Shown piece by piece: positions 12,413 to 63,120 of a DNA stretch of 64,000 nucleotides; the first letter of the stretch is position 1; the number at the start of each line of letters is the position of its first letter. The notes under the pieces are model-generated. The model worked only from the letters and a program-made list of their open reading frames with translations. It was not told where the DNA came from and searched no databases. This DNA is from Anthoceros angustus (taxonomy: Eukaryota > Plantae > Anthocerotophyta): assembly GCA_010909165.1 (NCBI GenBank), contig MU008159.1, positions 1,612,001 to 1,676,000 of the forward strand. Direction: 5' to 3'. Position numbers and translations under genes: made by a program.

Positions 12413-12646
12413 TCCCATTCTTGTTTACAAGTCCATGAACAGAAATTCGTTCTCAGTGGACTTCAATAAGTATAGGTAGAGATTCGGATGACGTGACTAT
12501 CACTTATTATGCCGAGATACGTACGTATAACATGGAGAATTATTTAATGAATATATGGACCGCCTCCATATATTTATAAGCAGCACCATTCCTTTCTGTC
12601 TTCTCGTGAATTATTGCTGTTAGTTCCGGCGAGGAGGGAGAGCAGG

Positions 12647-14760
<2,114 letters not shown>

Positions 14761-25221: not shown

Positions 25222-28200
25222 ATGGGGAAGCTCGCAGAGCCGCTGCTGCAGCGGGAGCGGCGTGATGAAGGAGAGGAGCGCGCGCAGGCCTTCTCCAACG
25301 CGAGCGCTTGGAGCAGGCTCACCTTCGCGTGGCTGAAGCCGCTGCTGGCGCGAGGGTCACGGCGCGCCCTGGACGCCGCCGATTTGGCGGCGCTAGGGCC
25401 ACAGGACCAGGCGAGCACAGCTTTCCGCGCCCTCGAGCAGCAGGGGCAGCAGGGGCAGCAGGGGCAGCAGCAGGAAGAGCAGGAGACGGTGCTGTGGGCC
25501 TTGGCTCGGTGCTACTGGAAGGCCATGGTGTGGTCGGGAGGCTACGCTCTGCTCAAGAGCGTGAGCTCGTCGGCCAGCCCCGTGTTCGCCAGCTTCTTCA
25601 TCCGGTTCGCGGGCGGGCAGCGGGACTTCCCCCTGGAGGGCTACGCTCTGGCCGCGGCCATGTGCGTGGCCAAGCTCCTGGAGTCGGCCTCGGAGCGGCA
25701 GTGGTTCTTCCAGGCCCGGCGAACCGGGATGCAGGCGCGCGCGGGGGTGGTCGCCGCGCTGTACGCCAAGCTGCTGCGGCTGTCGAGCTCCGGGAGGAAG
25801 GCGCACCCGGCCGGGGAGCTGCTCAACTACGTGGCGGTGGACGCGTTCCGGGTGGGCGAGCTCCCGTACTGGGCGCACTTCGTGTGGGCGACGCCGGTGC
25901 AGATCGCGCTGGCCACCGCCATCCTCTTCTTCTGCGTGGGCTGGGCGACGCTGGCGGGGCTGGCCGTCATCCTGCTCACCGTGCTGGGCAACCAGCCCTT
26001 CGCCCAGCGGCAGCAGCGCGCGCAGACGCAGCTCATGGCGGCGCAGAGCCGGCGGCTGCGCGCCACCGCCGAGTTCCTGCGCAGCATCAAGATCCTCAAG
26101 CTGCAGGCCTGGGAGGAGCGCTTCATGGCCGCCGCGCAGGAGCTGCGGGACCAGGAGATGGGGTGGCTGTCCATCAACCAGTACATCCGCGCCGCGCACT
26201 CCGTGCTCTTCTGGACCTCGCCGGTGCTGGTGTCCGCCGCCACCTTCGCCGCCTGCGTGGCCCTGGGCCGCCCGCTGGACGCCGGCAACGTCTTCACCGC
26301 GCTGGCGGCGCTGCGGATCGTGCAGGAGCCCATCCGCGCCGTGCCCGACCTCATCTCCGCCCTCATCCAGACCAAGGTCTCCCTGGACCGCATCGACCGC
26401 TTCCTGCGGGCCGACCACCTGCAGGAGGACGCCGTGGACAGGAGCGAGCCCGACAGCGGCAGCAGCTCTGAATTCGCAGTGTCCATCGACGACGGCGTCT
26501 TCAGCTGGAACCCGGACGCGCCCGCAGCCACCCTCCGCAACATCCACCTCCGGGCCCGCCACGGCCAGATCGTCGCCGTCTGCGGCCAGGTGGGCGCCGG
26601 CAAGTCCAGCCTGCTCATGTGCGTGCTCGGGGAGATTCCCAAAATCTCGGGAACGGTGAGTTTGCTCGTTTGCTCGTTTGCTCTCGTCGCTTCTTTGATG
26701 CTCTGGGCGGCCTCTCATTTGCTGTGCGTGCTTCCCATCTGGCGGGCCAGGTGAAGGTTTCGGGCAGGAGCGTGGGCTACGTCTCCCAGACTGCGTGGAT
26801 CGAGAGCGGGACGATTCAGGACAATGTCCTGTTCGGGAAGGCTATGGATTATGACAAGTACCAGTCGGTGCTGCATGCCTGCGCACTGGAGCAGGACATC
26901 GAGGAGCTCCCGTATAAGGATCTTACGGAGATTGGAGAGAGGGGCCTCAACCTCAGTGGTGGGCAGAAGCAGAGAATTCAGCTGGCTCGTGCACTCTACC
27001 AGGACTGTGACATCTACCTCTTGGATGATCCCTTCAGTGCTGTGGATGCGCACACCGTTTCCAGTCTGTTCAAGGTGCGTGCCGTGCCGATGCCGTGCTG
27101 CCTTGTAACAGCCTCATGACACTGCTGTGACAGGATGTCACAATGCCATAACCCTTGCAGAACTGCGTGCTACGAGCCTTGGCTGGGAAGACCGTAATTC
27201 TTGTCACACACCAAGTGGAGTTTCTGCCTGCTGTGGATACTATTTTGGTGAGCCGGTCTAACACACATGCCTTCGTTTCTGCTCAAGCTCATTTGCTGCC
27301 AAGGACCCCAGCTCTTACTCATAAATATTCCTGTCTGCAGTTGCTGGAAGATGGACAGATCCGGCAGTCAGGCAACTACAGCCAAATCAACTACGAGGGA
27401 AGTGCGTTCGAGAAGCTTATCCTTGCCCACCAGGAGGCCATGGGCTTGGTTGATGATTCCTCCAAAGCTTCCACTCCTGCACCCTCTGCCCCGTTCTTAG
27501 CTCAACCTGAGCTCCCACAGAGCGGAAACGAAGTATCTAAGGGGGCATCTGGAGGAGTGCAACTGACAGCCGAGGAAGAAAAGGAGTCAGGAACCTCAAC
27601 CTGGAAAGCTATTTTCGACTACTTTGGGCAGGCAGATGGCTGGTACTACTACTCCATATCGGTCGCGAGCGCTGTCATCTTCACAGTGGGCCAACTTGCT
27701 AGCAACTTCTGGCTGGCCAGAGCGGTGAACAACCCGAACATTACCCCTGCTGTGCTCGTCGGAGTGTACGCAGCCGTGGGGATCTCTGCTTGTCTCTTCG
27801 TTTACATAAGAGGAAGAGTGATTGCAACTATGGGCCTCAAGGCCTCTGCTTCCTTCTTCACCGGAATGTCCACAGCCATTTTCCGAGCCCCCATGTCGTT
27901 CTTCGATTCTACTCCCACCGGCAGAATAATCACCAGGGTATATCACCATCATATGGCATTCTGCGTTTTCCGCTTACCGTTTTCTGACACCTGGTTGATC
28001 ATTTGCTTGACCAGTTCTCCTCCGATATGAGCTCCCTAGACACGGATGTCCCCTTCAGCCTGGGGCATTCTGCCTCTGCCAGCTTGAACTATCTTGGATG
28101 TCTGTTCATGACTGCTGTGGTGACATGGCCAGCTCTGGTAGTGGGCCTCCCTCTCATGTATGCATCTACAGAGTATCAGGTACGTGCAAGTAGCTACCGT

Positions 28201-30022
28201 GCAAAATGTGCATCACACGAGTTTTAGCTAGGCCAGAGGTGCCGGTGATTCACACGCTGGAGTGGCAGATGTACTACTTGAAGTCAGCCAGGGAGTTGAT
28301 CAGGATCGACGGCACTACCAAGGCCCCAATCATCCAGCACTACGGAGAGACCATAGCTGGTGCTACCACAATCCGGGCTTTCGGGAAGGAGGAGAGCTTC
28401 ATGCGAAGGACCCTGGAGCTGGTGGACGCCAACTCCAACACCTCCTTCCACAGCTTTTCTGCTCTGCAATGGCTCACACTCCGAGTCGAGTTTCTGTCAG
28501 CAGTTGTTGTACTGAGCTCTGCTCTGGCACTGGTGATCTTCATCGACCACATCGACCCAGGTAAGCCCTCTTCAGGCTTGCCGATTGCAAGGAGCCTGGC
28601 AACGAGACAGCACAGGTCGTGCCATGAATGGTTCTACCTAGTAAGTTCTGGCACTGCCCTGCACAGGAATGGCTGGACTGGCAGTGTCATACGCGCTGAG
28701 CATGGGTGGAATCCTAGTGTTCAGTGTGATGAATCAGTGCACAGCTGCAAACCAAGTAGTTGCCGTGGAGAGAATCCGACAGTACCTGAGCATTCCGAGC
28801 GAGGCTCCGGCCGTGATTCCAAACTCTGTGCCACACAACTGGCCGACGTCCGGTGAAGTTGTGCTGGAGAATCTACAGGTCTGCTGCATCTCCCGGTCAC
28901 TTGTTCCAGGCCTCCTCTCTTGCCCGTCAGACATCAAGTCCTGAGACAATCCAGCACTTCCTGCTGCTGCGCTGACAGGTTCGCTACCGACCCAACGCTC
29001 CCCTCATTCTGCACGGCATCTCCTGCACCCTGACGGGCGGGGAGCGGGTGGGTGTGGTGGGCCGCACCGGCAGCGGCAAGTCTACTCTCATCGCCGCTCT
29101 GTTCCGCCTGGTGGAAGCGACGGGCGGCAGAATCCTCATAGACGGGGTGGACATCGCCACCGTCGGCCTTCACGACCTCCGCTCCAGACTGGCCATCATC
29201 CCCCAAGACCCAGCTCTCTTCCGCGGCACAGTGCGCTTCAACCTGGACCCCCTCTCCCAGTACCAGGACGCGGAGCTGTGGCAGGTACCCAGTCTTTCCT
29301 GCCTGCTGCCCTGCCCTCCTCACGCATCACCTCCAACAGTGCTGACTTGCCTGTGTGAAAAACCCTTCTCAGGCCTTGGACGCATGCCAGCTCGGGGATA
29401 CCATCCGTGCCAAGCCCGGACTCCTGGATTCCGAAGGTGGGCCTGAGCTTGTGTGCCAACACCGTACACCACCGCCCGCAGCTGCAGCATCCTTTATGTT
29501 TCCAATCGGCACTGACGCCATGCCCGTCGCTTGTCTCACTCGCAGTTGGAGACGATGGTGAAAACTGGAGCGTGGGGCAGAGGCAACTCTTCTGCCTCGG
29601 CCGTGTGCTGCTCAGGCAGTGCCGCATTCTGGTGCTGGATGAAGCAACCGCATCCATCGACAACACCACCGACGCCATCCTCCAGAGGGTCATCCGCATG
29701 GCCTTCCGAGGCTGCACGGTGATCACAGTAGCCCACCGCATCCCCACCGTCGTGGACAGTGACAAGATCATGGCCTTGAGCGACGGTAGCCCAAAACATT
29801 CACAAGTTCGTTTTCGTTTGTTGCTTTACTGCTGAGACTGCCATGCTTACAGTTCTCACCGTGTCGTGAACAGGCAAACTGATGGAGTTGGACTCGCCCT
29901 CAAATCTTCTGGGCAGCGCCAAGGAGAGTTCGTTATTTGCGAGGCTCGTTGCAGAGTACTGGGCCAGCCACACACAAGGACATCCAAGCCATGATCCAAT
30001 TTCGTCAACACCTTCCTTGTGA
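25222..30022 (+). CDS. ABCC: ABC transporter C family, short form lacking TMD0; tandem paralogue of the upstream gene
   Basis: Starts MGKLAEPLL; same domain motifs ([38 protein letters not shown]) and same intron positions as the upstream copy; stop TGA at 30020-30022. Confidence 0.93.
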
Positions 30023-33834: not shown

Positions 33835-37424
<3,590 letters not shown>

Positions 37425-40603: not shown

Positions 40604-41807
40604 AGGAGACAGCCTTGCGAAGTCCCATAGATGCGATCCTGCCTGTGACCTGGCCCTCGGGAGACGGAAGCTGCGCTTGCGGAATTGCTTCCTTCTTGCT
40701 GCTTCCCAAGTGCTCTACATGTATGCTTTCTTCCTCCTGCCACTATCACGGCACCGCCGCGCTATCCAGGTAAGGCAAGGGAAGGGCAGGGAAGGGAAGG
40801 GAAAGGAAGCGAGGGGAAAGAGAGCGTTCTTTACTCAGGCTGGGATTCGTCTGCACTCCACGGCCGACCGCCTCCTTCGCCTTGCGCCGGTGATTCTTAT
40901 TGTCCATCATTCTGTCTGTGGTCCTGTCCTGTGAGCCTGTGTGCCTGTGTGCCTGTGTGCTAACAAACTGCCTCCGCCATCCCCCTTGGTAAACCAGCTC
41001 CCCCGTCAGCCCTGCTCCAAGTCCTGCTTGTGTGGCAGAGGCCTCTATAGTGGGGAGTCTCGGGTTCCCCTTGCAATGTATGTATGCGTGTTGGGCTGCG
41101 TGTTTGTCCGGCCAGGAGGCAGGCCAGGGCAGAGGCAGTTGGTGAGGTTTGTGGGTTCTGGTTTTATGTGGAAGCCATGGCATGTGGGCAGGGCACAGTC
41201 TGCTTGTGCTGCGGTGTCGGTGACTGCGCCTGGACGCGTGCTCAAGTTCTCTCTCCTCTCGGAAGCAGGAAATGGCGTCGCGGAGATGAAGCCTGTGTGA
41301 GCAAGGCGTAGCACGTGACGGAGGCAGAGGCAAAGGATCGATCCAGCACGAATCGGATTGCAGGCTACCAAGACGCGGCATTCGTTCAGGTAATTGTCTT
41401 GTCGCTGTCACCAAACTTCTTGCTGGCCGTCCGGTTGGGCGCGCGCTGGCGGCGCCAGCTGTGGGCACGTGGCCCGCGCTGGTCATGGCTGGGTGTGCGT
41501 ATGTAGCATGATTGAAGCTAATGGCGGGTCGTGACGCTGCTTTTGCGCAGGCCGTGAGGCGGGTGATGGACAAGGCCTCTAAGAGCTTATGTGTTGTGCC
41601 AAAGCAGGGGACGCATAACACGGTCGCTTGTCCTGTTCTGTTACGATTACTCTTACGCCTTACAGGATTCGGCGGCGATGCCATGTCCAGATGAATGAGC
41701 CTGCTGTTCTCCATGCCTGCCTGCTCTCCTGCTTCTCATCAGCTCACTCCGAAATTGTACACGAGGCCAGCTCGACGCAGCAGGTGTTGGAGGGCAGCAC
41801 TCGCCCT

Positions 41808-43007
41808 ATGATTTCCGGAGCAATGGTGGTCGACTCTCTCCGAATGTACAGCGGTGTTGTGATGGACGCATTGCAGCAGCACGACTCCAGCTTCTTCATC
41901 TCGGATCCCAGGCTGCCAGATCACCCCATCATCTACGCCAGCCAGGGCTTTTGTACCATGTCAGGCTTCCTGCATGATGAAGTGGTGGGTCACAAGTTCC
42001 CATTTCTGGACGGACCCGATACCGACAGGGTGACCATGTTGGAAATACGGGATGCCATCAGAGATGAGCAGCCATGCCAGGTCCGGATACTCAACTACAC
42101 CAAGCATGGCAAGCCCATCTCCAATATCTTCCATTTGGTGCCTTTGTATTCGAGACGAGACGGTACTCTTGTCCAGTTTGTGGGACTCTACAGTCCCGTG
42201 TCTCGGATTGCAGAGCGTGTGGATGATTCCCCACGTCTTGCTGGTATCGAGATGGCATTATGGTTGTTTAGTGGACTGTTGGACGACTCAGCTGTCCAGG
42301 AGCTGGACCACAAACGGGTGGAGGCAGGTGCCTGGATAGAGCCCTATCGGCCCTCGTCTCTGGAAGTATCTGCTGAAACAGACTCAGAGGTGCAGGAAGC
42401 AGAAGAAACCAGGGCTCGGAAAGCTGTTCAGTCCGTGATCAGGGAGCTTACAAGGTGTAGTGGAGGGAATGTATCAGAGAAGAGGGGGGTGTCCCTCGAC
42501 GTCAGTGCCGCCCTGGGAGTCGTATGTTCATCTCTGCTTCTGGCATTGAATCGCGTGAAGCAGAGTTTTGTGCTTGTGGATCCTCACTTACCCGACATGC
42601 CCATTGTGCATGCCAGCGAGCTCTTCATTGCTCTTACGGGCTACTCCAGGGCTGAAGTGCTCGGGAGAAACTGTCGGTTTCTGCAGGGTGCAGACACAGA
42701 TGCACTTGCCGTTCAGGAGATTCGGAACTCGGTGAAAGAACACCGGTCCTGTACCGTAGGACTTGTAAACTACAGGAAGGATGGGCAGGCTTTCGGGAAT
42801 CTGCTCCATATATGTCCAATCCGGAACTGCCTTGGAAAGATCGCCTTCTATGCAGGGGTGCAGCTGCCCCTCAATGAATCAGACTGGGAGGCCAGCAAGA
42901 GGAAGGGGCATACTGCTCATCTGAAGCAACTGGGAGCAGTGGGTGCAATCAAAGTTGCTGTTCGCAGTTTACACGGCTCTGGACTGCGACGTGCACGCAA
43001 TGTTTAA
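41808..43007 (+). CDS. PLP: PAS/LOV (LOV/LOV) blue-light photoreceptor, intronless CDS; alternative start 41691
   Basis: Two PAS/LOV domains and no effector domain. LOV1 FFISDPRLPDHPIIYASQGF...GHKFPFLDGPDT has no Cys; LOV2 SFVLVDPHLPDMPIVHAS...GRNCRFLQG is canonical. CSSLLLALNRVKQSF linker and C-terminal GAVGAIKVAVRSL are typical of plant LLP/PLP. Confidence 0.93.
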   Translation: MISGAMVVDSLRMYSGVVMDALQQHDSSFFISDPRLPDHPIIYASQGFCTMSGFLHDEVVGHKFPFLDGPDTDRVTMLEIRDAIRDEQPCQVRILNYTKHGKPISNIFHLVPLYSRRDGTLVQFVGLYSPVSRIAERVDDSPRLAGIEMALWLFSGLLDDSAVQELDHKRVEAGAWIEPYRPSSLEVSAETDSEVQEAEETRARKAVQSVIRELTRCSGGNVSEKRGVSLDVSAALGVVCSSLLLALNRVKQSFVLVDPHLPDMPIVHASELFIALTGYSRAEVLGRNCRFLQGADTDALAVQEIRNSVKEHRSCTVGLVNYRKDGQAFGNLLHICPIRNCLGKIAFYAGVQLPLNESDWEASKRKGHTAHLKQLGAVGAIKVAVRSLHGSGLRRARNV

Positions 43008-46000
43008 GATTTTGTGCCCTACGTACATAACATGTAAACAGCTGTGGTACCACGCACGCCCACTGCTCTTCCCGTATGCGGGTGCAGGACGTTTATGGTG
43101 GTATTTCCAGGCCTCTTTGACAAGCCACCACAGAACGGCAGTCCGCCTAGCAACCAAGATTTGGTTTACGAACCTCTCTTCAGCCCGATGGTGAGAACTA
43201 CAGCTGAAAGAAAGCCAAGTCTTCAGCGTGTGTGTCTTTTCGCATAGAGTCTTCTCTAGCGTGCATAAAAGGAAACGTCTATTTTAGTCCACGTGCATAG
43301 CATCCTCAATTTGGGCCTGCTTCCCACAACAGCAGATCAAGTTCTTGGTTATCAAGTGCAGCAACCTGGGTCTGTCAAAAGCGGGCAGAGACATAGATGG
43401 TTCTATCTGCAGTTTGGTTCCACGCATCTGCAGTTCCAAAGAATTGGTGCCTGATTACCCTGTGTTCTCCTAGTCCGGAGGTCACACGAATAGTCACTCC
43501 GGCTGCGTTAACTTTGCTAAACTGAGGGTGCGTACCATGCATTCTCAAGGCATGCTGAAGTCAGTCTCGTTTCAGCAGCAGCCAAGATAGCGGATACTGT
43601 GTGTCACTTGGAAGGATCTGCCTAAAGAAGGGATTAAAAACTTGCAATATCAGAATTGAGGGAAGACGTAGCCAGGGGAATCAGCAACAATCACTGGTGA
43701 TGGTTGCAAGCAACACGACCAGCTGTGAGAAGTACCTCCCGGCCACACTCCCCAGTCAGGCCAAGTGACCAAATTGATTGTCCACAGTTCAGCTGGCCTC
43801 AAAATATTCGAGGAGGAATTCACCGCACTTACGAGCCTGCCCTGGTAGCCTTGGACAAGGTCGCTTCTACTCTCCAGGACTTCGGAGCGGAAATGGATCG
43901 CAGCAACCAGAATCCGGAGGTGAAGCTGCAAACTGACGCCGCCTTCATCCCTTACTTTGCCCCGGCTGCGCCCTCAAGCAGGGTTGGTGGTGGTGTGGGG
44001 CACCCCGGGGCCATCACTGCTCGTGCTCCGCCTCCCAGCAAGCTTCTCTTCTCTTGTTACAATTCGAGGGTGAAATCAGCGGCTTCCCTGCGAAGGACGC
44101 AGCCAGGTTTCTCAGGACGAGGTCAGCCACAGCGGGACGAGTTGCATACGCAGGCTGGAGCATCGTTTGCAGGCTGAATTTGTGATGGAGGCGGCCAAGG
44201 ATGGGCTCTGCCTGCGTGCATTGCATGTGAAAATGCGGGATGGGGGGACCGGGAGAGGAGCAAATTGGCGGGAAGGGCAGATAGCGGAGAGAGTTGCGGC
44301 TCAGTGCAAAGGGGAATTATGGCGCCGGAGGCATGTGCTGTTGCTGCTTGGTAGCTTACGTGCATGAAGTGGAGTGGCACTTAGAGAGCCTTTGGCAGCA
44401 TTGCATGTCGGTTCGAGAGGAGATGGTGGGGATGGATATGCGGTGTTGCAGCCTTCATTGCCAACAGGGACACAGAGTTCAAGTGCTGGTGAGTTGTAAG
44501 CATGAGTGTGAGTCCTGGATTCTGCAATCTTCTGCCAGCTGCTTCAGTCCGCCTTGCATGTCTTTGTGGATTCTGGGAACTTTTGATAGCTGACAATCGC
44601 TTGCACTGCACGTTTTTTTGTAAATATGTCACAGCACTGCTTCTGCCTGGGCCCTTGAACTGGGGGCATATCGAATAAGACACAGTCTGGAGGCCACTGG
44701 GCACCAGAAGACAACTTGGAGTCTTCGGCACCCTTGCAGAATTCGCGGTAACAGGGTTGAGAGGACCAGGTCTCGAACTTTTTGCTTTGGGCGGAAGGGT
44801 AGAGGAGAGGCCGGCTTGCAGGTCTTAGTGAATCTGCTGTGTCTGCCCTGCTACTTGACGGCTAGCTCTCCCTTTCCGTTGTGCTGTTGCTAAGCTGGCT
44901 ATAGCCATTTAGCAGTGCCTGCCATGTTATCACATTCCTTGAGGGTGATCTGAAAAACTGGATAGCAAGGATGAAGAGACCAATGTTGGAAATGCTGAAA
45001 TCCCAGCCTTGGGAACTGCAATCAGCAGCCCTGGTTACGATACTGTGCCTCGATGTCAGCGATGGAGTAGGGGCGCTGGCTCCACAGAGATCTGCCTGGT
45101 TCCAGCGTCGTGTCCGGTGATGAAGTGAGCCATTCAGCAGAGCAACGCAGGGGAGCAAGTTGATTGTGGAGGCACTTGGTGATGAGGGCACACAGTTTGT
45201 CCCATGTATACATATATGGGTCGTTGCAGCTTCGGTGGGAAATGCTGAGGTGATTTCGGGACCTTGAATTGGAAATCCCTCGTCAATCTTCCTCTTTGCA
45301 CATAGGAAGTGCACCATTTTCCCACAGGTCAGCAGTACAGCAGGTGCTTGTCACACAAGTCGTCAACATTATCTATGGAATACAAGGAGGCTCCACGATT
45401 TTGACCTTAGTACCTTCTTGTATTCCATACGTGGAGTATAGAAAGGCGTTTCGGGGCGCGAGACTATCTTTAAATTCAGTTGCGTAGGTGTAAATGGGGC
45501 GGCAAACTAAGGGACTGCCTTTTTCTCTGGAAAGAGAATTTCATATTCATTTATACTCCGCGTGAGAGACCACCTAATGCTCACACCCTCTCACCCCTTA
45601 CAGGGGCATGTCGAGTCGTGGCTATGTCACGTCTTCATGGTCCAAGTTGAGTAGTTGCGTCGGCACAAAGCCAACATGCTAAACGAGGAAACCAAAACGA
45701 GATAAGGAAAAACATAATAAGAGGCAAATAATGCGAATAGAAACCATGCAAAGAAGGGCTTGGGCAAGAAGAATTGGTTTTTGCTTTTCAGGTTCTCAGC
45801 TTTTAATTTTCATCTTTCGAAAATCTCTACAGCAGACTTTGTCTTGTGTATGTTGTCCTCCCTTCAAAGAAGACATCATACATTTCCTCGTGTGAAATTT
45901 CTTTCATTACATTTCAGCATCGTAGTGTTTGAGCCATGGTACCAACTTATGATGCCAAAAGAAGTAGTTAGAACGTGGTAGAAGAGACAACTTCCATTAC

Positions 46001-46467
46001 CAACTTATAGATGAAGAGAAAAGTCTTTGTTGTGATACAACTCCGCCGGCCCATTCTATGTCCCCATGAAAAGGATAGGTTGGAAAAGGTATTGGGCTCA
46101 CGCAACCTAAGGCCTTAGTGAAATTGTATAATTATGTTGATCAACCAATGAGACAAGCTTGAAATCCAAGTGAAATGCTGAACAAGATTTGACAGACTTA
46201 AAGACATGAGATTTTTTTTAATCAAATAGGAGGAGCATTTGAAATATGAATAGTCTAATTGAGATATCTTGTTGTTTAAGAGAAAAATATATGCACAAAA
46301 TTAAGCATAGGTGCTCAACTTCATCAATCAATTGCCAAATAAATTTATACTTGCCTCATGGCCGTGGTTTCTTGCCTCATGGACCTTTCAATGGACTATG
46401 TCATGCTAGATTAAGTGTGTGCGATGGTTTGCATAGTTTGGCACATGTGACCTAGTGGTATTGTATA

Positions 46468-47003
46468 CAGTCCACCCCCCTAATTGGGACTAGTTCGGAG
46501 TGCCTTTAGAGGTCCCATTAAGGGAGGTGTCCCGATTATATTTTCCTATTTAAAAATAATAAAAATATTATAAACTTTAAAAATCAAAAAATACCCAAAA
46601 AAAAGAAAATTTTAAATTTTGATTGATATGTTTCACTAAAAATAAATTTTACCACTTCTCTATATAGTTGTTTGAAAACTAGCACTCTCTCCAAGCAACA
46701 TCAAAAAACCTCTACCTATCATAAAGGAAAAAGCTTAGCTTAAGAGTCTTCAATCACAACTAAAAGTCTATTGTGCTCTGAAATAATCGATTCTTTTTTT
46801 CTTTTTTTAATTTTTTTTAGTAAAAAAATTAGAAATCCCATTTAGGGAGGAGAAACTAACATGAATGTATGTTTCAAAAGGTCCCAATTATCATTTAGGA
46901 AAAAATCCCATTTATTACATTGTAAACTAAAGGGAGTAGGATGGGAGGTCCCATTTAGAGAGGAATCCCATTTATAGTATTCCCAATTAGGGGGGGCCGA
47001 CTG
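46468..47003. mobile_element. Tc1/mariner (pogo-like) MITE
   Basis: TIRs CAGTCCACCCCCCTAATTGGGA versus reverse complement CAGTCGGCCCCCCCTAATTGGGA; TA TSD; AT-rich core with repeated TCCCAT(T)TA subterminal motifs. It interrupts a ~46-bp tandem repeat (TAGTTTGGCACGTGTGACCTAGTGG). Confidence 0.9.
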
Positions 47004-47520
47004 TAGTTTGGCACGTGTGATCTAGTGGTATTGTGTGATGGTTTGCATAGTTTGGCACGTGTGACCTAGTGGCACTTTGCGAACTAGTGGCCCAACTCCA
47101 CCGGGATCCATGGTGGTCCCAATATCATTGTCATTGAATTGCTAGTGATCATCGTATCATGAGCATTAAATTAGTTGATTTCCTAATTGGAAAACATACA
47201 TGTTAGCTAATAATAAATATTTAAAATTACTTTTAAAAGAAATAATAATAAAGTAGCTGAACAAACCAAAAAAGATGTGGAGTACTTAATAAGCATCCCT
47301 TTCATTGCATGCATAATTCAATAATTCCATTAAATATTCACTTTAACCAATCATTTAATAGGTATTTATATACAGCATGTATGAAATCAAGGTAGCTGAC
47401 CAAATTTATGAGCTCATGTATATGAATAAGCATGTTGCAAGACAATAACTCACTAGATGATCTATATTTCAAATGCTAAGAGCATTCTAATATAGAAGCA
47501 CATGTAGATGGATGTCCAGT

Positions 47521-47570
47521 GAAGAAGAAGAAGAAGAAGAAGAAGAAGAAGAAGAAGAAGAAGAAGAAGA
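47521..47570 (+). repeat. (GAA)n microsatellite
   Basis: About 16-17 perfect units. Confidence 0.97.
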
Positions 47571-47687
47571 ATTTTTAGTCCATTGAGCTTTAAGGAACTG
47601 TTACTCAACTTAAGGATAATCAAAGCAAGTTCATTTCACAACGAATACATAGTTTTTAATCTATAATACGAGTAAATATTATTCAAG

Positions 47688-48179
47688 ATGAAACTAACGT
47701 TAATTATGTATATGTTATGGGGTCTTTATGGAGTGACAGAGGCTAATGTCAGACACACACCTCAAAAAGTAAATTGTGGAAACAAACCTATAGAAACAAG
47801 TTTGATTTATCAGCAAGTACTCATATCAGCAATGCAAAGATTAGCTTCCACTGGGTTTTCAAAGTGGGAGGAGCGTAGAGACACTGGCACTTGGAGAGGA
47901 AAACGACTTAAACTCTCAGGATTTTACACGGGAATAGATCTTACAGGGAAGTCATGCGGTGAAGCTGTCTTCTATAGAGGTGGTTGTAGAGAGTCAACAA
48001 CTTGCACATCGGGTACCGATTGCGCCTTGTGTCTCGCCCGACTTGCAGATGAACTCATATATGAACATTGTCCAGGATCAGCAATCGCTAATGGATACGC
48101 TCATGATTGTTTTGTGCGCTATAGAAATCAAGGCTACACAGATCCTCAAGAAAAGCCCGAGTGGCCCTATACCCCATAG
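47688..48179 (+). CDS. Secreted single-domain DUF26/Gnk2-like (cysteine-rich repeat secretory) protein, 163 aa
   Basis: Signal-peptide-like N-terminus; FYRGGC-x11-CALC...CPGSAIANGYAHDCFVRY matches the DUF26 cysteine pattern and the terminal C.(L/V)RY. Confidence 0.8.
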   Translation: MKLTLIMYMLWGLYGVTEANVRHTPQKVNCGNKPIETSLIYQQVLISAMQRLASTGFSKWEERRDTGTWRGKRLKLSGFYTGIDLTGKSCGEAVFYRGGCRESTTCTSGTDCALCLARLADELIYEHCPGSAIANGYAHDCFVRYRNQGYTDPQEKPEWPYTP

Positions 48180-48477
48180 CACTACGCATTCATCATAATT
48201 CCAACTCATACTTAAAACCTTGAAATATTTCAACAATCCCATGGAACATTCCATTCTTCACGTCTTCAAGGTTTTTAATCTTTCTTCACGAAGGAATATG
48301 ACTCTAATATTTGTTCTCATAATGGTCTCCATATTACAAGGATAAAATATATGTAAATATTGAAATGTAAATATTAAAAAAGAAATACAACAGGTCCAAG
48401 GAATTTATACTCCATCAACAACATTTTCATTCCATCGCTCTTCAATATGCGTCTATGTTAAGCTGAAAATGTATAAA

Positions 48478-48632
48478 CTTCTAATTACTTTAGCAATGTT
48501 ATATAGATATAATATTCTTCTAATTAATTTAGCAATTTTATATAGATATAATATTCTTCTAATTAATTTGGCAATTTTATATAGATATAATATTCTTCTC
48601 ATTAATTTAGAAATATTATATAGATCTAATAT
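48478..48632 (+). repeat. 39-bp AT-rich tandem repeat, about 4 units
   Basis: AATTAATTTAGCAATTTTATATAGATATAATATTCTTCT units. Confidence 0.9.
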
Positions 48633-49934
48633 TTATTCGTATCGATGTTCATACTGCATGATATGATATCCAGTCATTAGACTTGCTTTGTATTGAATTA
48701 TTCTTATAAAATAAGAAAATAATAATGAATAGTTTTTCAAAACAAGTTGTGGACTTTGGTGTACCGAGGCTCTCATAGCTAACCGGGCAAGTACATGGTG
48801 ATGAAGAGACGGGAGAGGAAAAGCGCGAGCGTGGACGAATCTTTGTTTGCCGCCCACACAAGATACAATCCCTGAAAATACTTTGTGGCCGGCATCGCAG
48901 TAGCAGTTGGTTGGTTGTGTTTGGAACAGGAAGAGCCTGGAAGAACGTGGCCGGTGGCATTCCCATGGCGTCACACCCAGTGCCACCCGTTGTGGGTGTG
49001 ATGCCATCGCCATAGCGATAGCCTAAAGCCCTTAAAGCCATTGCCATTGCCAGGGCCCTGCGGCCGCAGGAGCCCGGCAGGCACCTCGGGCCCGGCGTTT
49101 GTCGCATAGTGGAATGTGGCGATCTGGAGAAAGGTGAAGGCCGGGTGCAGAGAGCCTGGTCCTGCTCCTGCTCCTGTGCCCAGTCCCGGTCCTGGTCCTG
49201 GTCCCGTTGCCAGGAACATACATAGCGCATGACGGCATATACCATCGCCTACATGCGCATGCGCGCATGCCGGCCTCAGGCCCACAGGCGTGGCGTGGGC
49301 CACTCTCCGCGCCTAATTTCCTCTCCCACTCGTCGCTCCTCTCCAGCCTCCAGCCTCCAGTCGACCGCGTCACTGCGCCTTCCCTGCCTTCAACTTCCAC
49401 TCATCCCCGAGCCTCCCAGTCCGCTCCCGCGTTCCAACTTGGGTACAGGGTTAATAGTCTAACCCACCCCGAACCACCCGGGGTGGCCGCCAGTACCGAA
49501 CATTCCCGAGGAAGAAGCGGAAGCAGCCGCGCATCTGGAAGGTGAAGAGAACCATCCGCCCCTCGTCCCCGTCCGTGTCCTTGTCCTGGGTCTCCCGCTG
49601 CCCAGACACTCTCAGCCTCTGCATTTGCTTGTGTGCTCATCCTGTTCTCCCTGCCTCGCCTGTGTCCCCGAGGTCCCTCAACTCCCGGCCTTTCCCTCCG
49701 GGCCGCGGCCTTCGGTCGCTCCTTCCTGACCAGGGCCTTCCTTCCCTTCCCTTCCCTTCCCTCTCCTGCCTTCGTTTTCCTGCTCCCCTGCTCTGGCTCC
49801 TTGTCTTGTTTGTGGGCACTCGGGACCGTCTGCTGCGGCCGCTCCAGAGCTGGCCGTGCGGAGGCGGGAGCAGTGGCGCTCCAGAGCGGAGCAATCCTGG
49901 CAGACACCGGGAGGTGTTGCCAAATCGAGGCACC

Positions 49935-50183
49935 ACGGCTGCGTTAACCAGTCCTCGACTTCGCCTGCATCCTAGGTTCCACGCGCTGGGGCAACGGAAC
50001 TCTCACCTGCTCTTGAGCTCACCTTCGCTGCACGGGGGTCGGGGCGCCACCCCGTCCGAAGGCGGGTGTCCCTCCGATCTCACCTACTTGGCGGGCGGTG
50101 GTCGGCTGCGGAATTTGACGGCCGCGGGCTCTGCTGGGCTGCTGCCTGCAGACCTGACTGCTTGCGCTCTTCCGTTAGTGTGA
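49935..50183 (+). CDS. Conserved non-AUG (ACG) uORF peptide of GGP/VTC2, 82 aa
   Basis: CACC-ACG-GCT start context; contains HGGRGATPSEGGCPSDLTYLAGGG, matching the conserved GGP uORF core (HGGRGALPSEGGSPSDLLFLAGGG); stops 48 nt before the main ATG. Confidence 0.88.
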   Translation, partial: TAALTSPRLRLHPRFHALGQRNSHLLLSSPSLHGGRGATPSEGGCPSDLTYLAGGGRLRNLTAAGSAGLLPADLTACALPLV

Positions 50184-50231
50184 CTGGAGGCCGGGAGTGT
50201 GGGCTTGTTGCGTGACAAAAAATTTGCGAGG

Positions 50232-52189
50232 ATGGAGATGCTGACCATCAGGCGGGTTCCGACCGTGGTGTCGATGAACCAAGAGCTGGAGCACGGTGGT
50301 TGCGGGAAGGGGTGTTTGGGGGCGTGTTGCATTTCAGGTAGGGGTGGGTTTGGGTTGCAGAATGCGGTGGATGTGAGCACCTCTGTCTACTTGGGGCTGA
50401 TGAGGGTGTCGTTTGCTCTTGTGCAGCCTCCAAGCTGCCGTTGTATCGCTTCGGGAAGAAGACGGCCGAGAGGGTGGAGAGAAAGGGATCGAATGCAGTT
50501 CCTGATGCGCGAGGCTCGCCTCGGACTGTGCTCGACTCGGAGAACGTTTTTCTGGACACCGTTGTCCTAGGGCAGGTGTGTGATCTGGTGTCAGTAGTGA
50601 GTCTGGCCGGAACTTCCTGCATGTTCGCCCGGGATATGACCTACCCATGGTCTGCTGGGTTTTTTGCGGGGTGTTCTGCTTCTGAGTCTACTGCTGTTGT
50701 TCTTAACCGGTGCAGTGGGAGGAGCGAATGGCTCGTGGCCTTTTCCGCTATGATGTGACCGCCTGCGAGACCAAGGTAATTTTTGGAGGGGATGACTGAG
50801 AGCTTCAGGGTGTGATACGGAGCCTTGTCCTCAAGTCTGCAAGGTTGTTCAACTGTGAGTTTGAAATGTATTAACCCGGAGTGTCATCCACAGATTCTGC
50901 GTGGTCAATTGGGTTTCATTGCCCAACTCAATGAAGGCCGGCACTCGAAGAAGCGGCCCACAGAGTTTCGTGTGGACCAAGTGCTCCAGCCCTTTGACCC
51001 GAAGAAGTTCAATTTCACTAAAGTTGGTCTAGAAGAGGTCCTCTTCTGCTTCGAGGAGGGTGAGACGGACGAAAGTTCTTATTACGAACAAGCGGAGGTC
51101 AAGGGAAGCCCAAACGTGATCGCTATCAATGTAAGTTGCTGCATGACGGATTGGGCATTTTGCGGCACTGTAGTCTGTCTCTTGCAACCCTTGTTGACAT
51201 TCGTCCTTCACTGGCCTGTTGCAGGTGAGTCCTATAGACTATGGGCACATCCTCCTTGTTCCTAGGGTCCTTGACTGTTTACCTCAGAGAATTGACGAAG
51301 AAACTTTCCTTTTGGCGTTACAAATGGCGGTTGAAGCTGACAACGAGTACTTCCGGGTTGCTTACAACAGTCTGGGGGCTTTTGCGACCATCAATCATTT
51401 GCATTTCCAGGTAAGTGCGTCTGTCATTTGCTGGCAGAGTCTGTCGCTGTGGGCTGCACTGACTCTCCGTCATTGTGCAGGCATACTACAATGAGACACG
51501 TTTCCCTGTCGAACGGGCAGCCACTATGGAACTCCCAACTGTCGTGAGTCCTCCCAAGAGGACCGTGCTAGTATCTGAACTCTGTGATTATCCAGTGAAG
51601 GCCTTAGTGTTCGAATTGCGGGAGAGTCTTGAAGATCTTGCAAATGCTGTGGCCAAGTCTTGCATAGAATTGCAGGAGCGGAACATCCCTTTCAACCTGC
51701 TGATAAGTGACCGGGGGTGCAGAGTGTTTCTCTTCCCTCAGGTACGTCGCTTGTCGCCTTTCAAGATCTGAGTGCACTGTTTTGGTGCATTCGAATCTCA
51801 CCAGCATCATTCTTGTCCTACTGGAGCGTGTTCTACCCACTTTAATCTCGTCTTCTTTGGGTTTACAGTGCTTTGCTGAAAGGCAGGCTAAGGGCGAAGT
51901 TGATCAAGATATCTTAGATATGCAAGTGAATCCAGCTGCTTGGGAGATCAGTGGCCATATTGTCCTGAAGCGCTCGTCGGACTATGACTTGGTAACAGAG
52001 GAGCACGCCTGTAGGCTGCTGGCCGAGGTATCTCTTTCAAAAGAAGCATTTGAAGAAGTGAAGATGATCTGTATGACTGTTGCTGGAGGTATCGATGGGT
52101 TCGTGGTCCCTCCATTGCTAGATGTGTATGCAACTGCAGCCAGAGATGTGAAAACCGTTGGCAGTTTTCAACAGACGATAGCATGTTAG
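50232..52189 (+). CDS. VTC2: GDP-L-galactose phosphorylase (ascorbate synthesis), 7 exons
   Basis: MLTIRRVPTVVS...GCGKGCLGACC, WEERMARGLFRYDVTACETK, FIAQLNEGRHSKKRPTEF, NVSPIDYGHILLVP, HIT motif ATINHLHFQAYY, QVNPAAWEISGHIVLK. Confidence 0.97.
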
Positions 52190-52884: not shown

Positions 52885-55182
52885 CTATAATCTCACATAG
52901 TCGTGCAGATTACATCCACTTGTCCTTTGCTTTAGCTTTCGCATAGCTTTCCCTTCTATCTGTCTAATCCGTTCTCTTGTGACATTGAAAACATTGCCAA
53001 TTTCCTCAAGAGTCCTTACTTTCCCATCCTCTAGCCCATACCTTAGCTTCAGAATCTCCCTCTCTCGCTGATCCAGAGTGTCTAGAAGAGAATTCACATG
53101 CTGCTTTTGAAATTCCTGGGAAATCGCGTCTTCTGCTGCAGATTCAACCTCGGTGGAACCCAGGATGTCCTGCAAAAGCAAGGGAGAGGCAGGTAAACTG
53201 GCAGTGAAAAGACAACTGTGGTTGGTCAGCCCGCATAAATTTCTGGGGATAATAAGAACACTTACTCCAAGGGTTCGGTCGTCATGGTCTTTTCCAATGG
53301 GTTTCTCCATCGACTGAGGCATCTTCGCAGATCTCGTTATCAGCTTAATCTTGTCTACACCCATACCCAGCATTTCAGCAACCTCCTCATCTCTAGGCGG
53401 CCTTTCGTAGTGCTGAGAAATGGTGCGCCTGGCTTTATTGATCCGAACAAGGACCTCATACATATGGACCTACACATCAAGCAATTCATGAGCTGCTCGA
53501 CTGCGACACAGGTGAGGTCCATCATATAGACAATACATGAGCAGCTGCAAGCAGAGAACAGCAGAAGCTCCGGTGATAGGAGCCCTTGCAAAAAGCTTAC
53601 CGGCAAACGAATTGTCCTCGATTGCTCAGAAACAGCTCTGTTTAAGGCCTGCCTGATCCACCAATGTGCATAGGTAGAAAACTTAAAACCTTTGCGGCAA
53701 TCAAATTTCTCAGCACCTCGAATAAGGCCCATGCTTCCTTCCTAGCACGCCAAGCAGCTAGAAAGGTTAAGCTTGAGAACCTCTAGTGCTACAGATGGCG
53801 ACTGAGAACTGAAAGCCGAGATAGCTAATATCAACCTCATGAGCAGGCCAGGAAGAGATGCTCAATTGCTACAGGCCGTGGTACCTGAATGAGATCCTGC
53901 AAGCACAAGCCCCGGCCCACATAGTTCCTCGCCATTGATACAACTAGACGGAGATTCGAAACAATCATTCTGTCCTTGCACTCTTGCCCATCCATTAACC
54001 GGGTCTCAAAAGCTGCAGGCTGCATGCCAGCGGCATTTGCCCATTCTTGCAGACTCGGCTCCCGTCCAAGCTGAGCAGTGACTTCTTTTTTGACAACATC
54101 TAAATGCATGAGATCCTGCACAAAGAAAGGTGCTTGTCAGATGACACCACCACGACCAGACACATGGAAGCACCAGCTGAGATATTGTATTCACTGAGGA
54201 ACAACTACCTGAATCCCTCGCGACAACTCGGCTTCCTCGTCCATTGTTAGAAGTCTTTTTTTGCACATATCCTTTATGCACCCACGCACTCGTTCACCTG
54301 CGTCCTCCCCTAAAGCGGACTTCCGCACTTTGGAGGAACCGGAACGTTTTCGAGACATCTCTGCTGCAAGTTTCTCTGCCTTCCCTTGAGCCCTCTCCCT
54401 CTTCCTCAGCCTCTCCTTCCGACGGGTAGATCTAACCACTACATTACCATCACTCTCAGGGGACCTCCCATTGGTATCCCTAGTTTCGTCTTTGGACAAA
54501 TGGATTCCATTCAATCCTTGCCCCAGGTCCGAAAAATGCCCCCTGGCTTCCTCGGAGAGCAGCTCCACATCTGTGCTGGCCTGTTCCATCTCGCGCAACC
54601 TAGCTCTCTCAAGCATCAGAAGATCCTTCTCCGATGGAAATTCCCCCATTTCTTGCTCATCGTCAACCCATGTGTCCGCAAGCAGCATTGCATCCTCGGC
54701 CGCTTTGGCAGCAGCTCTGGCCAGAGTCATTGCTTCCACTGCTGCTGCTGCCGCTAATGCTGCATCACTTGCTGTCCAGCTTTCTGTCAGAGTGGCTGCC
54801 ACTCCCTTGGGAACCTTCCTGGCTCTAATGCACCAGGAGGTATCAGTGTGTCCTCCGGGGTACGAGCGTGACAAGAGCCTGCAACACAAGGAGGGCACCT
54901 GTGAGACACTGAATCCTGACCAGCGTTGCATCACAACCAAGTTCCGACGTACCGAGCAAGCGGGTCGGTGAATGCGGAAGGTTGTGCTTGCAAGGCATCG
55001 GTTTCCTTGAGAGCAGCAGACGTGCGCCCGGGATTCTCCCCTCTCTGCAATAGCCTTGTGGAGGGTGATGCAGGAGTTGCCTGAACGGTGGTGAAACCAG
55101 CGGTGGAACCGAACGCCTGCTTGAGCTCGCAGCACTGTGACCGAAGCGCTCCTCGAGGCCATGCTGCCAACACCTCCGCCAT
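52885..55182 (-). CDS. Nuclear-encoded plastid sigma-70 factor (SIG2/SIGX-like), multi-exon; alternative start 55162
   Basis: Region 2 [45 protein letters not shown]; region 3 SRTIRLP; region 4 [28 protein letters not shown]; N-terminal [16 protein letters not shown] block. Confidence 0.93.
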
Positions 55183-60376: not shown

Positions 60377-63120
60377 TGTAAGAAATCTTTTGACCTAGAT
60401 ATAATATTATATCTAGGTCTTCTGCAAATAATATTATATCTAGGTCTTGACCTAGATATAATATTATTTGCCTATATCTAAGTTTGTGTGCGCAAGGAAG
60501 AGGAGGAGGAGGAGGAGGGAGAGAGGGAAAGAGAAAGAAAGAGGGGTGGGTAATCTCGAGTCCCAAATATGAGGAGGGCGAGAGGGAAGGAGGAGGAGAG
60601 AGGGAAAGAGAAAGAAAGAGGGGTGGGTAATCTCGAGTCCCAAATATGAGGAGGGCGAGAGGGAAGGAGGAGGAGGGGAAAAGCGGAAGGACAGTTGGGG
60701 GAGATTATAAGAAGTGTAAGGGTATTAAAGCCCAATGTACTTAGACTAATACACTTAGTCTAAGTTAGGTGTCAGTTAAGTATCATTAGTTTAGCTGAAG
60801 CTAATCACTAAGAAGCTTCTTGTGCTCCTTCCTAGTGGCTTCTTGTGGAGCTTTCTAGGGAACCCTGTTGGAGGGTATAAATACCCTCCAAGCCTTATCT
60901 CAATGTGAGAGAGTTACACTTCCCTCCTCCTCTCCTCGCCTCTTTCCACCATCATGTGCTGCCACAAGATCCTTCAACTGGTATCAGAGCCTTGGCTTGG
61001 TTGTGTTGTGATGTTAGAATTTTCTAGCTGCAGGGCTGGCAGCAGCTCGTGGAATTGCAGGTGATCCATATTGCGGCGAGGCCGCGCGGCGGCGCGGCGG
61101 CGAGGCCGTGGCGAGGCAAGGCCGCGGGCGCGAGCCCGTGTTCGCCGAGGCCTTGGCCGCGAGGCCGTGCGGACACGGGCGCGACGCGGGCGCGGGCAGC
61201 GGGGCCTTGGCCGCGGAGGCCGTGCGGACACGGGCGCGGGCAGCAGGCCGTGGCGAGGCCTGGCCGCGGAGGCCGTGCGGACAGCGAGGCCGTGGCGAGG
61301 CCGCGCGGCGCGGCAGCCGCGGCGGACACGGGCGCGGGCGCAGCAGGCGCGGCCGCGAGGCCTTGGCGCGGGCAGCGGGGCGCGGGCGTGGCGCGGCGCG
61401 GGCGCGTGGCGCGGCGCGGGGCGGGCGTGGCGCGCGCGACACCGGCCAGCGGGGCGCGGCGCGGGCGCGACGCGGGCGAGGCGCGGGGCGGCGCGACGCG
61501 GGCGCGACGCGGGCGCGACGCCGACGCGACGCGGGCGCGACGCGGGCAGCAGGCGCGGCGCGGCGTGGCGCGGGCGCGGCGCGGGCAGCGGGGCCATGGC
61601 GCGGGCGCGGGCGCGACGCGGGCGCGGGCGTGGCGCGGCGTGGCGCGGCGTGGCGCGGCGTGGCGCGGGCGCGGCGCGGGCAGCGGGCCGTGCGGACAGC
61701 GAGGCCGCGGGCGTGGCGCGGGCGTGGCGCGGGCGTGGCGCGCGAGCAGCCACCATGTGAGGACTCGTGCGGACAGCGAGGCCGTGCGGACAGCGAGGCC
61801 GCGCGGCGAGGTGAGCACGGGCGCGGAAGCGTCGCGGCGAGGCGCGGGCGCGGGGCGTCGCGGGCGCCCAAGAACCCGGCACCGAAATAATCGTGGGTGC
61901 CGAACGCCGGGCGGCGAGCAGAAAATTCGCCGAAATATTCAGCGGAATACTCCGGTGGAACAGTCAACGGCAAAATACACGGGCCGCACGGTGACTGTTT
62001 TCTTCTTTGACTTTTCTGACAAGGCGAGTCGAGTGTTTTATCTGTATCGATTTTTGAATCATGATGTCTTCATCATCAGAAAACGTCATGTTCAATATCG
62101 AGAAGTTAGATGGTACTAACTTCCCGTTCTGGAAAGAACAAGTGTATAATGTTCTAGTGCAGAAAAAGCAGATCAAGCCCATAAAGCTGTTAGGCGTCAA
62201 ACCGGATAGTATGACACAAGATGAGTGGAAGGACCTGGATGAGCTTGCTAGATCTACTATCATGCTAACATTGTCAAAAACAGTGTACTTCAATGTGAAA
62301 GATAAGACCACGAGTTCTGATGTGGCGGCATGTGACTGTATGAGAAGCAAAGTGCGGCTTCTCGGGTTTATTGGTTGAAAGTGGTGGACTTGAAGATGAA
62401 GGAAGGGACGAGGATGTCCGATCATCGAATGATTTCAATACCATTTTCAGACTCTCATCTCAAGGTATCACATTTCCAGTTAGTGAGAGCTATGTTTTGG
62501 TCACATTACGGAGAGTTGGGACACCTTTAAATGCACTCGAGTAATTACACTGCTAGTGGTCTTACCATTGTAAATGTAGAAGGTAGCACATTGGCGAGGA
62601 GGTGAGCAGGAAAAATATGGAACCTTCAAAAGGTTCCGGTGCCCTCATAGTGAGAGGGAGGTCCCTGCGAAGGGAAACAGCCGGACGAAGCTTTTCTCGT
62701 AGCAAATCTTGTAGTCGTAACAAGAATGTGGAGTGTCACTATTGTCACAAAGGGTCACTTCAAAAGAGAGTGCGAGAAGTTCAAAAGGACCAAGGAAAAG
62801 AGAAGCGGCGACAAGAAGGCGACTTGAATGTCGAGGTTGGAAGAGTTAAATTACATTGAGGACGGAGATGTCCTTATCTCTTCTTACTTGAATCTTTGCA
62901 CAATTAACGGTAGTGGATAGTCATTTATTACGCAATTGGATAATTGACTGCGGTGCATCTTTCCATGTTACTCCTCATAGAGTGGTTTAGCACGTATGAT
63001 GCTACAAGGAAAGGATGTGTTAGGCTTGGAAATAACTCGCATGCGGATCGCGGGCGTTGGTGATGTCTGACTCAAGTTTGACAACATGAGTCTTCCTTCA
63101 TCTTTGAAGGACATTAGAGC
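60377..63120 (+). mobile_element. Ty1/copia element (Tnt1/Tork-like), 5' part: LTR about 60377-60976, PBS, GC-rich leader, degraded gag-protease
   Basis: TGTAAG...TTCA LTR with TATAAATA; PBS TGGTATCAGAGC (tRNA-iMet) at 60979-60990; gag FNIEKLDGTNFPFWK..EWKDLDELARSTIML; zinc-knuckle remnant ECHYCHK; protease WIIDCGASFHVTP; truncated after LKDIR. Confidence 0.9.
61075..61870 (+). repeat. Extremely GC-rich low-complexity tract (CGCGG/CGTGG/GGCCG units) in the copia leader
   Basis: About 800 bp made almost entirely of G/C pentamer-like repeats. Confidence 0.9.

What the first reader, a model, noticed from the sequence alone, without database searches (positions are those of the whole stretch)
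41808..52189. PLP photoreceptor gene sits about 7 kb from the gene of its target enzyme GGP/VTC2: candidate light-regulated ascorbate module
Seen: co-oriented PLP/LLP (41.8-43.0 kb) and GGP (50.2-52.2 kb), separated only by a MITE, repeats, short unassigned ORFs and one small DUF26 gene in an AT-rich island. Known: in Arabidopsis PLP binds VTC2/VTC5, and in tomato and Arabidopsis PLP inhibits GGP with relief by blue light; in Arabidopsis these genes are on different chromosomes. Inference: near-adjacency of two low-copy, physically interacting genes is unlikely by chance. It may be an ancestral or selected enzyme-inhibitor gene pair, combining uORF feedback and photoreceptor control at one locus.
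Basis: partly seen in the sequence, partly recalled or inferred. Interest (0 to 1): 0.85.

Follow-up and report, generated by a model that had tools for sequence, protein, structure and literature searches.

The report
Hornwort vitamin C gene neighbours
In hornworts the gene for the enzyme that limits vitamin C synthesis lies about 7 kb from the gene for its blue-light-controlled inhibitor; the arrangement is real and old within hornworts, but it is absent from every other plant checked and is most likely a chance neighbourhood kept by slow genome reshuffling.

Summary
Both genes are real, intact orthologues in an Anthoceros-type hornwort: PLP/LLP (CDS about 41691-43007; LOV2 intact, LOV1 without its cysteine) and a 7-exon GGP/VTC2 (50232-52189; HLHFQ motif, ACG-started uORF). 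The link is not a misassembly. A distant hornwort (probably Notothyladaceae; PLP 51% identical) has PLP 6.96 kb upstream of the GGP uORF in the same orientation, and contigs of a related species are collinear across 44-50 kb. But an unrelated sigma-factor gene is kept in the same block, and the genes between the pair differ. No GGP lies within 10 kb of PLP in Marchantia, Calypogeia, Physcomitrium, Ceratodon, Selaginella or Klebsormidium; Ceratodon, tomato and Arabidopsis carry them on different chromosomes. So 'land-plant ancestral pair' is unsupported. One named pair has odds near 1 in 4,000-6,000, but among thousands of known partner pairs one such neighbour is expected. Best reading: chance juxtaposition in a hornwort ancestor, kept by background synteny; the proteins probably act in trans as in seed plants (untested in hornworts). 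Selected linkage is not excluded (about 0.15). Side results: probable 2-kb spliced PLP 3' UTR; independent LOV1 decay in hornworts. No earlier scan note covered this pair.

The parts
40654..40769 (+). Possible first (non-coding) exon of PLP; inferred only
   Evidence: GT donor at 40770; length fits what is left of the 3,534-nt RNA contig of run X1.
41269..41389 (+). Probable 5' UTR exon of PLP, followed by an intron 41390-41665; inferred
41691..43007 (+). PLP/LLP coding sequence, single exon (438 aa from ATG 41691; true start unsure, 41808 is a downstream ATG)
41859..42197 (+). LOV1/PAS domain, degenerate: Cys replaced by Phe (codon 41997-41999), motif GHKFPFLDG, signalling Gln replaced by Tyr
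   Evidence: alignment
42555..42866 (+). LOV2 domain with intact GRNCRFLQG (Cys codon 42672-42674), both Asn and the GVQ Gln; Trp of FWN replaced by Gly
   Evidence: E 6e-34 to phototropin LOV2 structures
43008..45106 (+). Probable long 3' UTR of PLP with an intron 44489-44634, 1.48 kb after the stop codon
   Evidence: spliced GT..AG joint in RNA contig X1 record 1, which has 2,771 further nt to the left of 44200; continuity with the CDS is inferred
46468..47003 (.). MITE, 536 nt, about 25-nt terminal inverted repeats, TA target duplication; high copy; absent at this site in the related species X7
47521..47571 (.). (GAA)17 microsatellite; breaks short-read contigs here
47688..48179 (+). Single-domain DUF26 (PF01657) secreted-type gene, 163 aa, GC3 0.33; also present in related species X7, not in the distant hornwort contig; no RNA contig in X1
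48478..48633 (.). 39-bp AT-rich tandem repeat, 4 copies
49487..50231 (+). GGP 5' leader, at least 745 nt, no ATG; transcribed without an intron over 49487-50171
49935..50183 (+). ACG-started conserved GGP uORF, 82 codons, core HGGRGATPSEGG
   Evidence: conserved in distant hornwort and in two mosses
50232..52189 (+). GGP/VTC2 gene, exons 50232-50337, 50427-50575, 50716-50775, 50894-51130, 51225-51410, 51481-51741, 51869-52189; HLHFQ motif at 51396-51410
52885..54870 (-). Plastid sigma-70 factor gene, the control neighbour: also next to PLP in the distant hornwort, on the other side (5' end approximate)

Best explanation
Two ordinary orthologues, PLP/LLP and GGP/VTC2, came to lie near each other by a rearrangement in a hornwort ancestor (before Anthocerotaceae and Notothyladaceae split) and stayed there because hornwort gene order changes slowly, not because the linkage does anything. 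Each gene has its own promoter and transcript. Their products most likely act in trans as in seed plants: dark-state PLP binds and inhibits GGP; blue light forms the FMN-cysteine adduct in LOV2 and weakens the binding; the ACG uORF separately throttles GGP translation. Shown here: gene identity, intact LOV2, HLHFQ and uORF, linkage in two hornwort families, no linkage elsewhere. Inferred from orthology: binding, inhibition, light release and uORF feedback in hornworts (I put about 0.6 on the protein-level control being kept).
For: Linkage in a distant hornwort, with an unrelated sigma-factor gene retained too; one inversion of the PLP-GGP block explains the two orders. Intervening genes differ (PsbP-domain gene versus DUF26 plus MITE), and spacing is about 1.8 kb shorter in the related species X7, so the 6.93 versus 6.96 kb match is a coincidence. 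No GGP within 10 kb of PLP in Marchantia, Calypogeia, Physcomitrium (2 copies), Ceratodon (2 copies), Selaginella or Klebsormidium. Different chromosomes in Ceratodon (10 versus 3 and 12), tomato and Arabidopsis, and different records in Physcomitrium. In two mosses GGP keeps an unrelated methyltransferase neighbour, so lineage-wide GGP microsynteny arises without a functional partner. Anthoceros genomes are gene-dense and collinear with each other, with little collinearity to other bryophytes (PMC8075897). Expected number of partner pairs within two genes is 0.3-0.5 for 2,000 pairs and 1.6-2.7 for 10,000 (the pair counts are assumptions).
Against: The pair stayed together and co-oriented while the sequence between them was replaced and a flank was rearranged. 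Only one distant hornwort contig (13.8 kb) was available, so the background retention rate rests on very few genes (1 of 2 identifiable non-partner genes kept). PLP-GGP is a well-studied direct enzyme-inhibitor pair, and if only about 500 pairs are that notable the chance of one hit is about 0.1.
Confidence: 0.73

Rival explanations
1. Hornwort-specific selected linkage: the adjacency arose by chance but is now kept because shared chromatin or cis-elements, or co-inheritance of matched alleles in a haploid-dominant plant, keep the inhibitor-to-enzyme ratio right.
For: Retained across two hornwort families, same orientation, despite turnover of intervening genes. PLP:GGP stoichiometry is thought to matter (PMC10291033). 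Hornwort PLP has a long stem branch (0.66), which would fit lineage-specific co-adaptation.
Against: The sigma-factor gene is retained equally. Tandem layout with an AT-rich island, a recent MITE and a separate gene between them; no shared promoter; no conserved non-coding match between the two hornworts in the intergenic DNA. The control works in trans from different chromosomes in tomato and Arabidopsis.
Confidence: 0.16
2. Relic of a land-plant or streptophyte ancestral pair that survives only in hornworts.
For: Both gene families predate land plants (LLP in Klebsormidium and Coleochaete, GGP in Zygnematophyceae). Hornworts could keep old gene orders.
Against: Needs independent loss in liverworts, mosses, lycophytes and seed plants; absent in the algal outgroup Klebsormidium. 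No other neighbour is shared between the window and any non-hornwort PLP locus. No collinear segment is known across all three bryophyte lineages (PMC8075897).
Confidence: 0.07
3. The neighbourhood is an assembly artefact at the AT-rich repeat island.
For: A high-copy MITE and a microsatellite lie between the genes; no single short-read contig spans 44.2-50.2 kb.
Against: One 13.8-kb contig from an unrelated hornwort run holds both PLP and the GGP uORF in the same order. Two contigs of a related species abut at the GAA repeat and are collinear. Same-organism DNA covers all bins.
Confidence: 0.02

Closest known systems
PAS/LOV protein (PLP/LLP; At2g02710, Solyc05g007020) inhibition of GDP-L-galactose phosphorylase (VTC2/VTC5, SlGGP1/2), PMC10291033, PMC11066809
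   Same: Orthologous genes; two LOV-type domains without an effector domain; LOV1 without cysteine and LOV2 intact; GGP with HLHFQ and ACG uORF.
   Different: Genes are 7 kb apart rather than on different chromosomes; PLP coding sequence has no intron; LOV1 cysteine is replaced by Phe rather than Gly, independently; interaction untested in hornworts.
Bryophyte, lycophyte, fern and algal LOV/LOV proteins (PpLLP1/2, MpLLP)
   Same: Same family; hornwort sequences form one clade (100/100) among them.
   Different: These keep NCRFLQG in both domains; all hornwort LOV1 domains have lost the Asn, the motif Gln and the GVQ Gln, and the Anthoceros group has also lost the Cys. None of those checked is linked to GGP.
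Plant functional gene clusters and linked pairs (biosynthetic clusters, head-to-head NLR sensor-helper pairs, S-locus type recognition pairs); from own knowledge
   Same: Physical neighbours whose products act together (in seed plants).
   Different: No shared promoter or head-to-head layout, no allele-specific recognition known, an unrelated gene in between, no enrichment of other ascorbate-pathway genes seen among the ORFs scanned in the window, and retention no better than an unrelated neighbour.

Membership tests
PLP/LLP (PAS/LOV, TWIN LOV 1) | Two tandem LOV/PAS domains, short C-terminal helix, no kinase or F-box domain | tested here: met
PLP/LLP (PAS/LOV, TWIN LOV 1) | Closest relatives and tree position among named LLP/PLP proteins | tested here: met
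   (50% to MpLLP; hornwort clade 100/100)
PLP/LLP (PAS/LOV, TWIN LOV 1) | Photoactive LOV2 residues (Cys, Arg, Gln, two Asn, terminal Gln) | tested here: met
   alignment to phototropin LOV2
PLP/LLP (PAS/LOV, TWIN LOV 1) | FMN photocycle and light-dependent binding and inhibition of GGP | not testable with these tools
   needs spectroscopy and interaction or enzyme assays
GGP / VTC2 | Full-length homology to annotated GGP with conserved exon blocks and open frame | tested here: met
   (exon by exon)
GGP / VTC2 | HIT-like HLHFQ catalytic motif | tested here: met
GGP / VTC2 | Conserved ACG-initiated uORF in the 5' leader | tested here: met
GGP / VTC2 | GDP-L-galactose phosphorylase activity | not testable with these tools
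   enzyme assay needed
Selected functional gene pair or cluster | Physical linkage that is real and conserved in relatives | tested here: met
   (hornworts only)
Selected functional gene pair or cluster | Retention above the background synteny of unrelated neighbours | tested here: inconclusive
   sigma-factor gene equally retained, PsbP-domain and DUF26 genes not; one distant contig only
Selected functional gene pair or cluster | Linkage in deep or independent lineages | tested here: not met
Selected functional gene pair or cluster | Shared promoter or single transcript | tested here: not met
   tandem orientation; separate RNA contigs with no RNA cover over 47.2-49.0 kb in run X1; contigs show presence, not absence
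Selected functional gene pair or cluster | Co-expression across light and dark conditions | not testable with these tools
   only assembled contigs of one probable RNA run were available

The most novel reading that the evidence does not exclude
Hornworts keep the blue-light inhibitor and its target enzyme as a selected, co-regulated two-gene module, a primary-metabolism enzyme-inhibitor pair held together for well over 100 million years, with a PLP that has independently converged on the seed-plant one-active-LOV design.
Probability: 0.15. Interest if true: 0.65.

Novelty: new member of a known kind. Interest (0 to 1): 0.3.

Why it matters
The PLP-GGP switch is known only from flowering plants, and Marchantia ascorbate is reported not to respond to light. 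An intact hornwort PLP and GGP with uORF make Anthoceros a good place to ask when blue-light control of vitamin C synthesis arose. The linkage is unreported in the papers I could search. If it were selected it would be a rare plant example of a clustered enzyme-inhibitor pair in primary metabolism; if neutral it is a curiosity, with one practical use: both genes can be cloned or deleted as one 11-kb fragment, but cannot be separated by crossing.

Tried and rejected
A hidden protein gene at 43-45.5 kb: six-frame reading and Pfam gave nothing; RNA points to a UTR. Conserved spacing (6,927 versus 6,956 nt): rejected as coincidence because the related species is about 1.8 kb shorter. Two hornwort PLP paralogues: rejected as less likely; the two sequence types follow families and both sit by GGP. 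Metagenome scan with the PLP alignment gave only unrelated LOV loci, none with GGP. GGP homologue search seeded with a cotton protein returned only flowering plants. P0106 had no contig on record. Exon-level GGP proteins P0122 and P0126 led to a moss contig and short unidentified contigs, with no PLP. The Pfam copy used for direct scans did not hit single GGP exons. The Atlas could not type the sigma factor. The pan-hornwort genome paper (Schafran 2025) is not held; the Marchantia VTC2 chromosome was not found.

Full report
Source. The window comes from an Anthocerotaceae hornwort: its PLP is 92-93% identical to Anthoceros agrestis LLP. A genome of 1,972 windows on 266 pieces and 2019 runs would fit A. 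angustus (119 Mb, 14,629 genes; PMC7027989); that species name is my inference.

The genes. The ORF ending at 43007 encodes two PAS/LOV domains and no effector domain. LOV2 keeps every flavin-contact residue I checked against phototropin LOV2 structures. LOV1 reads GHKFPFLDG and has Tyr for the signalling Gln. GGP has seven exons with GT..AG introns, no stops and 440 codons; its exons match annotated GGPs, it has HLHFQ, and its ATG-free 745-nt leader carries the ACG uORF at 49935-50183.

Between the genes. The MITE, repeats and DUF26 ORF are as described. A probable RNA run of the same organism has a 3,534-nt contig spliced GT..AG at 44489-44634 and ending at 45106; 2,771 nt of it lie left of the stretch I laid, which is what the PLP coding exon plus about 237 nt of leader would need. 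So 43-45 kb is probably a 2-kb PLP 3' UTR with an intron 1.48 kb after the stop. This is inferred: I did not lay that part, and a contig does not prove one transcript.

Assembly. Same-organism DNA contigs cover all 30 bins of 44.2-50.2 kb. In a related species (run X7), one 6.8-kb contig covers 44282-47452 without the MITE and runs 5.1 kb further left, another 8.4-kb contig covers 47674-50198 and runs 6 kb further right, and they meet at the GAA repeat. That the left contig holds PLP is likely from its length but not shown.

Linkage in hornworts. Contig L003 (13.8 kb, run SRR33208241) encodes a PLP 51% identical to the window's, placed with Paraphymatoceros and Phaeoceros (91/80). It ends in the GGP uORF, same strand, 6,956 nt after the PLP stop; the GGP coding part lies beyond the contig end. 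The linkage therefore predates the split of Anthocerotaceae from the Notothyladaceae side, older than the 117-million-year Anthoceros-type spore used as a fossil minimum. But the same contig carries the sigma-factor gene that follows GGP in the window, there upstream of PLP; one inversion of the PLP-GGP block converts one order into the other. The gene between the pair is a PsbP-domain gene there and DUF26 here, and no intergenic DNA is alignable. Of two identifiable non-partner genes on L003, one is still a neighbour, so retention of GGP is at most about twice as likely under selection as under background synteny.

Linkage elsewhere. No GGP exon or uORF lies within 10 kb of PLP in Marchantia (single VTC2 per PMC11066809), Calypogeia (48), Physcomitrium LLP1 and LLP2 (45, 46), Ceratodon (44), Selaginella (70) or Klebsormidium (47); checked by tblastn. 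Ceratodon has LLP on chromosome 10 and GGP on 3 and 12; the two Physcomitrium GGPs found are on other records than the LLPs (further paralogues not located). Tomato has PLP on 5 and 1, GGP on 6 and 2; Arabidopsis 2 versus 4 and 5 (PMC10291033). In two mosses GGP keeps a methyltransferase neighbour, a control showing that GGP microsynteny with an unrelated gene can be lineage-wide. Limits: a 10-kb flank says little in large genomes, and ferns, Lycopodiaceae and Zygnematophyceae were not tested.

Chance. For one named pair the chance of lying within two genes is 1.6-2.7e-4 with 15,000-25,000 genes. With 500, 2,000 or 10,000 recognisable partner pairs the chance of at least one hit is about 0.1, 0.3-0.4 or 0.8-0.9 (the pair counts are assumptions). 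The scan has flagged another such pair 148 kb away (FMN synthesis gene next to phototropin, unchecked), which illustrates the effect.

Mechanism. In tomato PLP is a non-competitive GGP inhibitor that blue light inactivates, the LOV domain is needed for binding, and stoichiometry is thought to matter (PMC10291033); the uORF limits translation (PMC11066809). The hornwort genes have the parts needed, so I expect the same trans-acting control (about 0.6), noting that Marchantia has an LLP yet its ascorbate is not light-responsive. Nothing in that mechanism needs linkage.

Side finding. All hornwort PLPs have a decayed LOV1, and the Anthoceros group has lost the cysteine, whereas the mosses, liverworts, lycophytes, ferns and algae in the tree keep it; seed plants lost it by other substitutions (PMC10291033 for Gly in Arabidopsis and tomato). 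This looks like independent convergence on one active LOV domain.

Verdict. Observation confirmed and extended to a hornwort-level conserved linkage; ancestral reading unsupported; selected reading possible but without positive evidence. Neutral synteny 0.73, hornwort-specific selection 0.16, deep relic 0.07, artefact 0.02. Interest 0.3.

Noticed in passing
window 41859-42197: LOV1 of hornwort PLPs has lost Asn, the motif Gln and the signalling Gln; the Anthoceros group also lost the Cys (to Phe), apparently independently of seed plants. Other seed-free plants in the tree keep the full motif.
   Followed up: partly
window 43008-45106: Probable 2-kb PLP 3' UTR with an intron 1.48 kb after the stop, plus several upstream ATGs in the inferred leader: features that usually mark a nonsense-mediated-decay target. 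Parts of this stretch are conserved in related species and some pieces (44394-44509, 44950-45100, 45270-45352) also occur elsewhere in their genomes.
   Followed up: partly
window 41691-41780: One-base difference against A. agrestis shifts the first codons of PLP, and the start Met of other hornworts reads ACG here; assembly error or natural change not resolved.
   Followed up: no
window 18861-24400 and 25222-29000: Two tandem ABCC-type transporter genes, 47% identical over 487 aa, with very different third-position GC (0.45 versus 0.93).
   Followed up: no
window 61000-61900: GC 80% block of short GGCGC-type tandem repeats with long stop-free frames on both strands.
   Followed up: no
window 47688-48179: AT-rich single-domain DUF26 gene inserted between PLP and GGP after the family split; kept in a related species at about 86% identity, not seen in the one RNA run.
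   Followed up: partly
protein P0002: A public LLP labelled Phaeoceros carolinianus falls inside the Anthoceros group (89% to the window), while another with the same label falls with Paraphymatoceros; probably a mislabelled sample.
   Followed up: no
L084:10001-17492: Ceratodon has two LLP genes in tandem on chromosome 10.
   Followed up: no
window 12614-13387 and 34357-35052: Exons of a class II DAHP synthase and of an SNF2 helicase; no other ascorbate-pathway gene among the long ORFs scanned.
   Followed up: no
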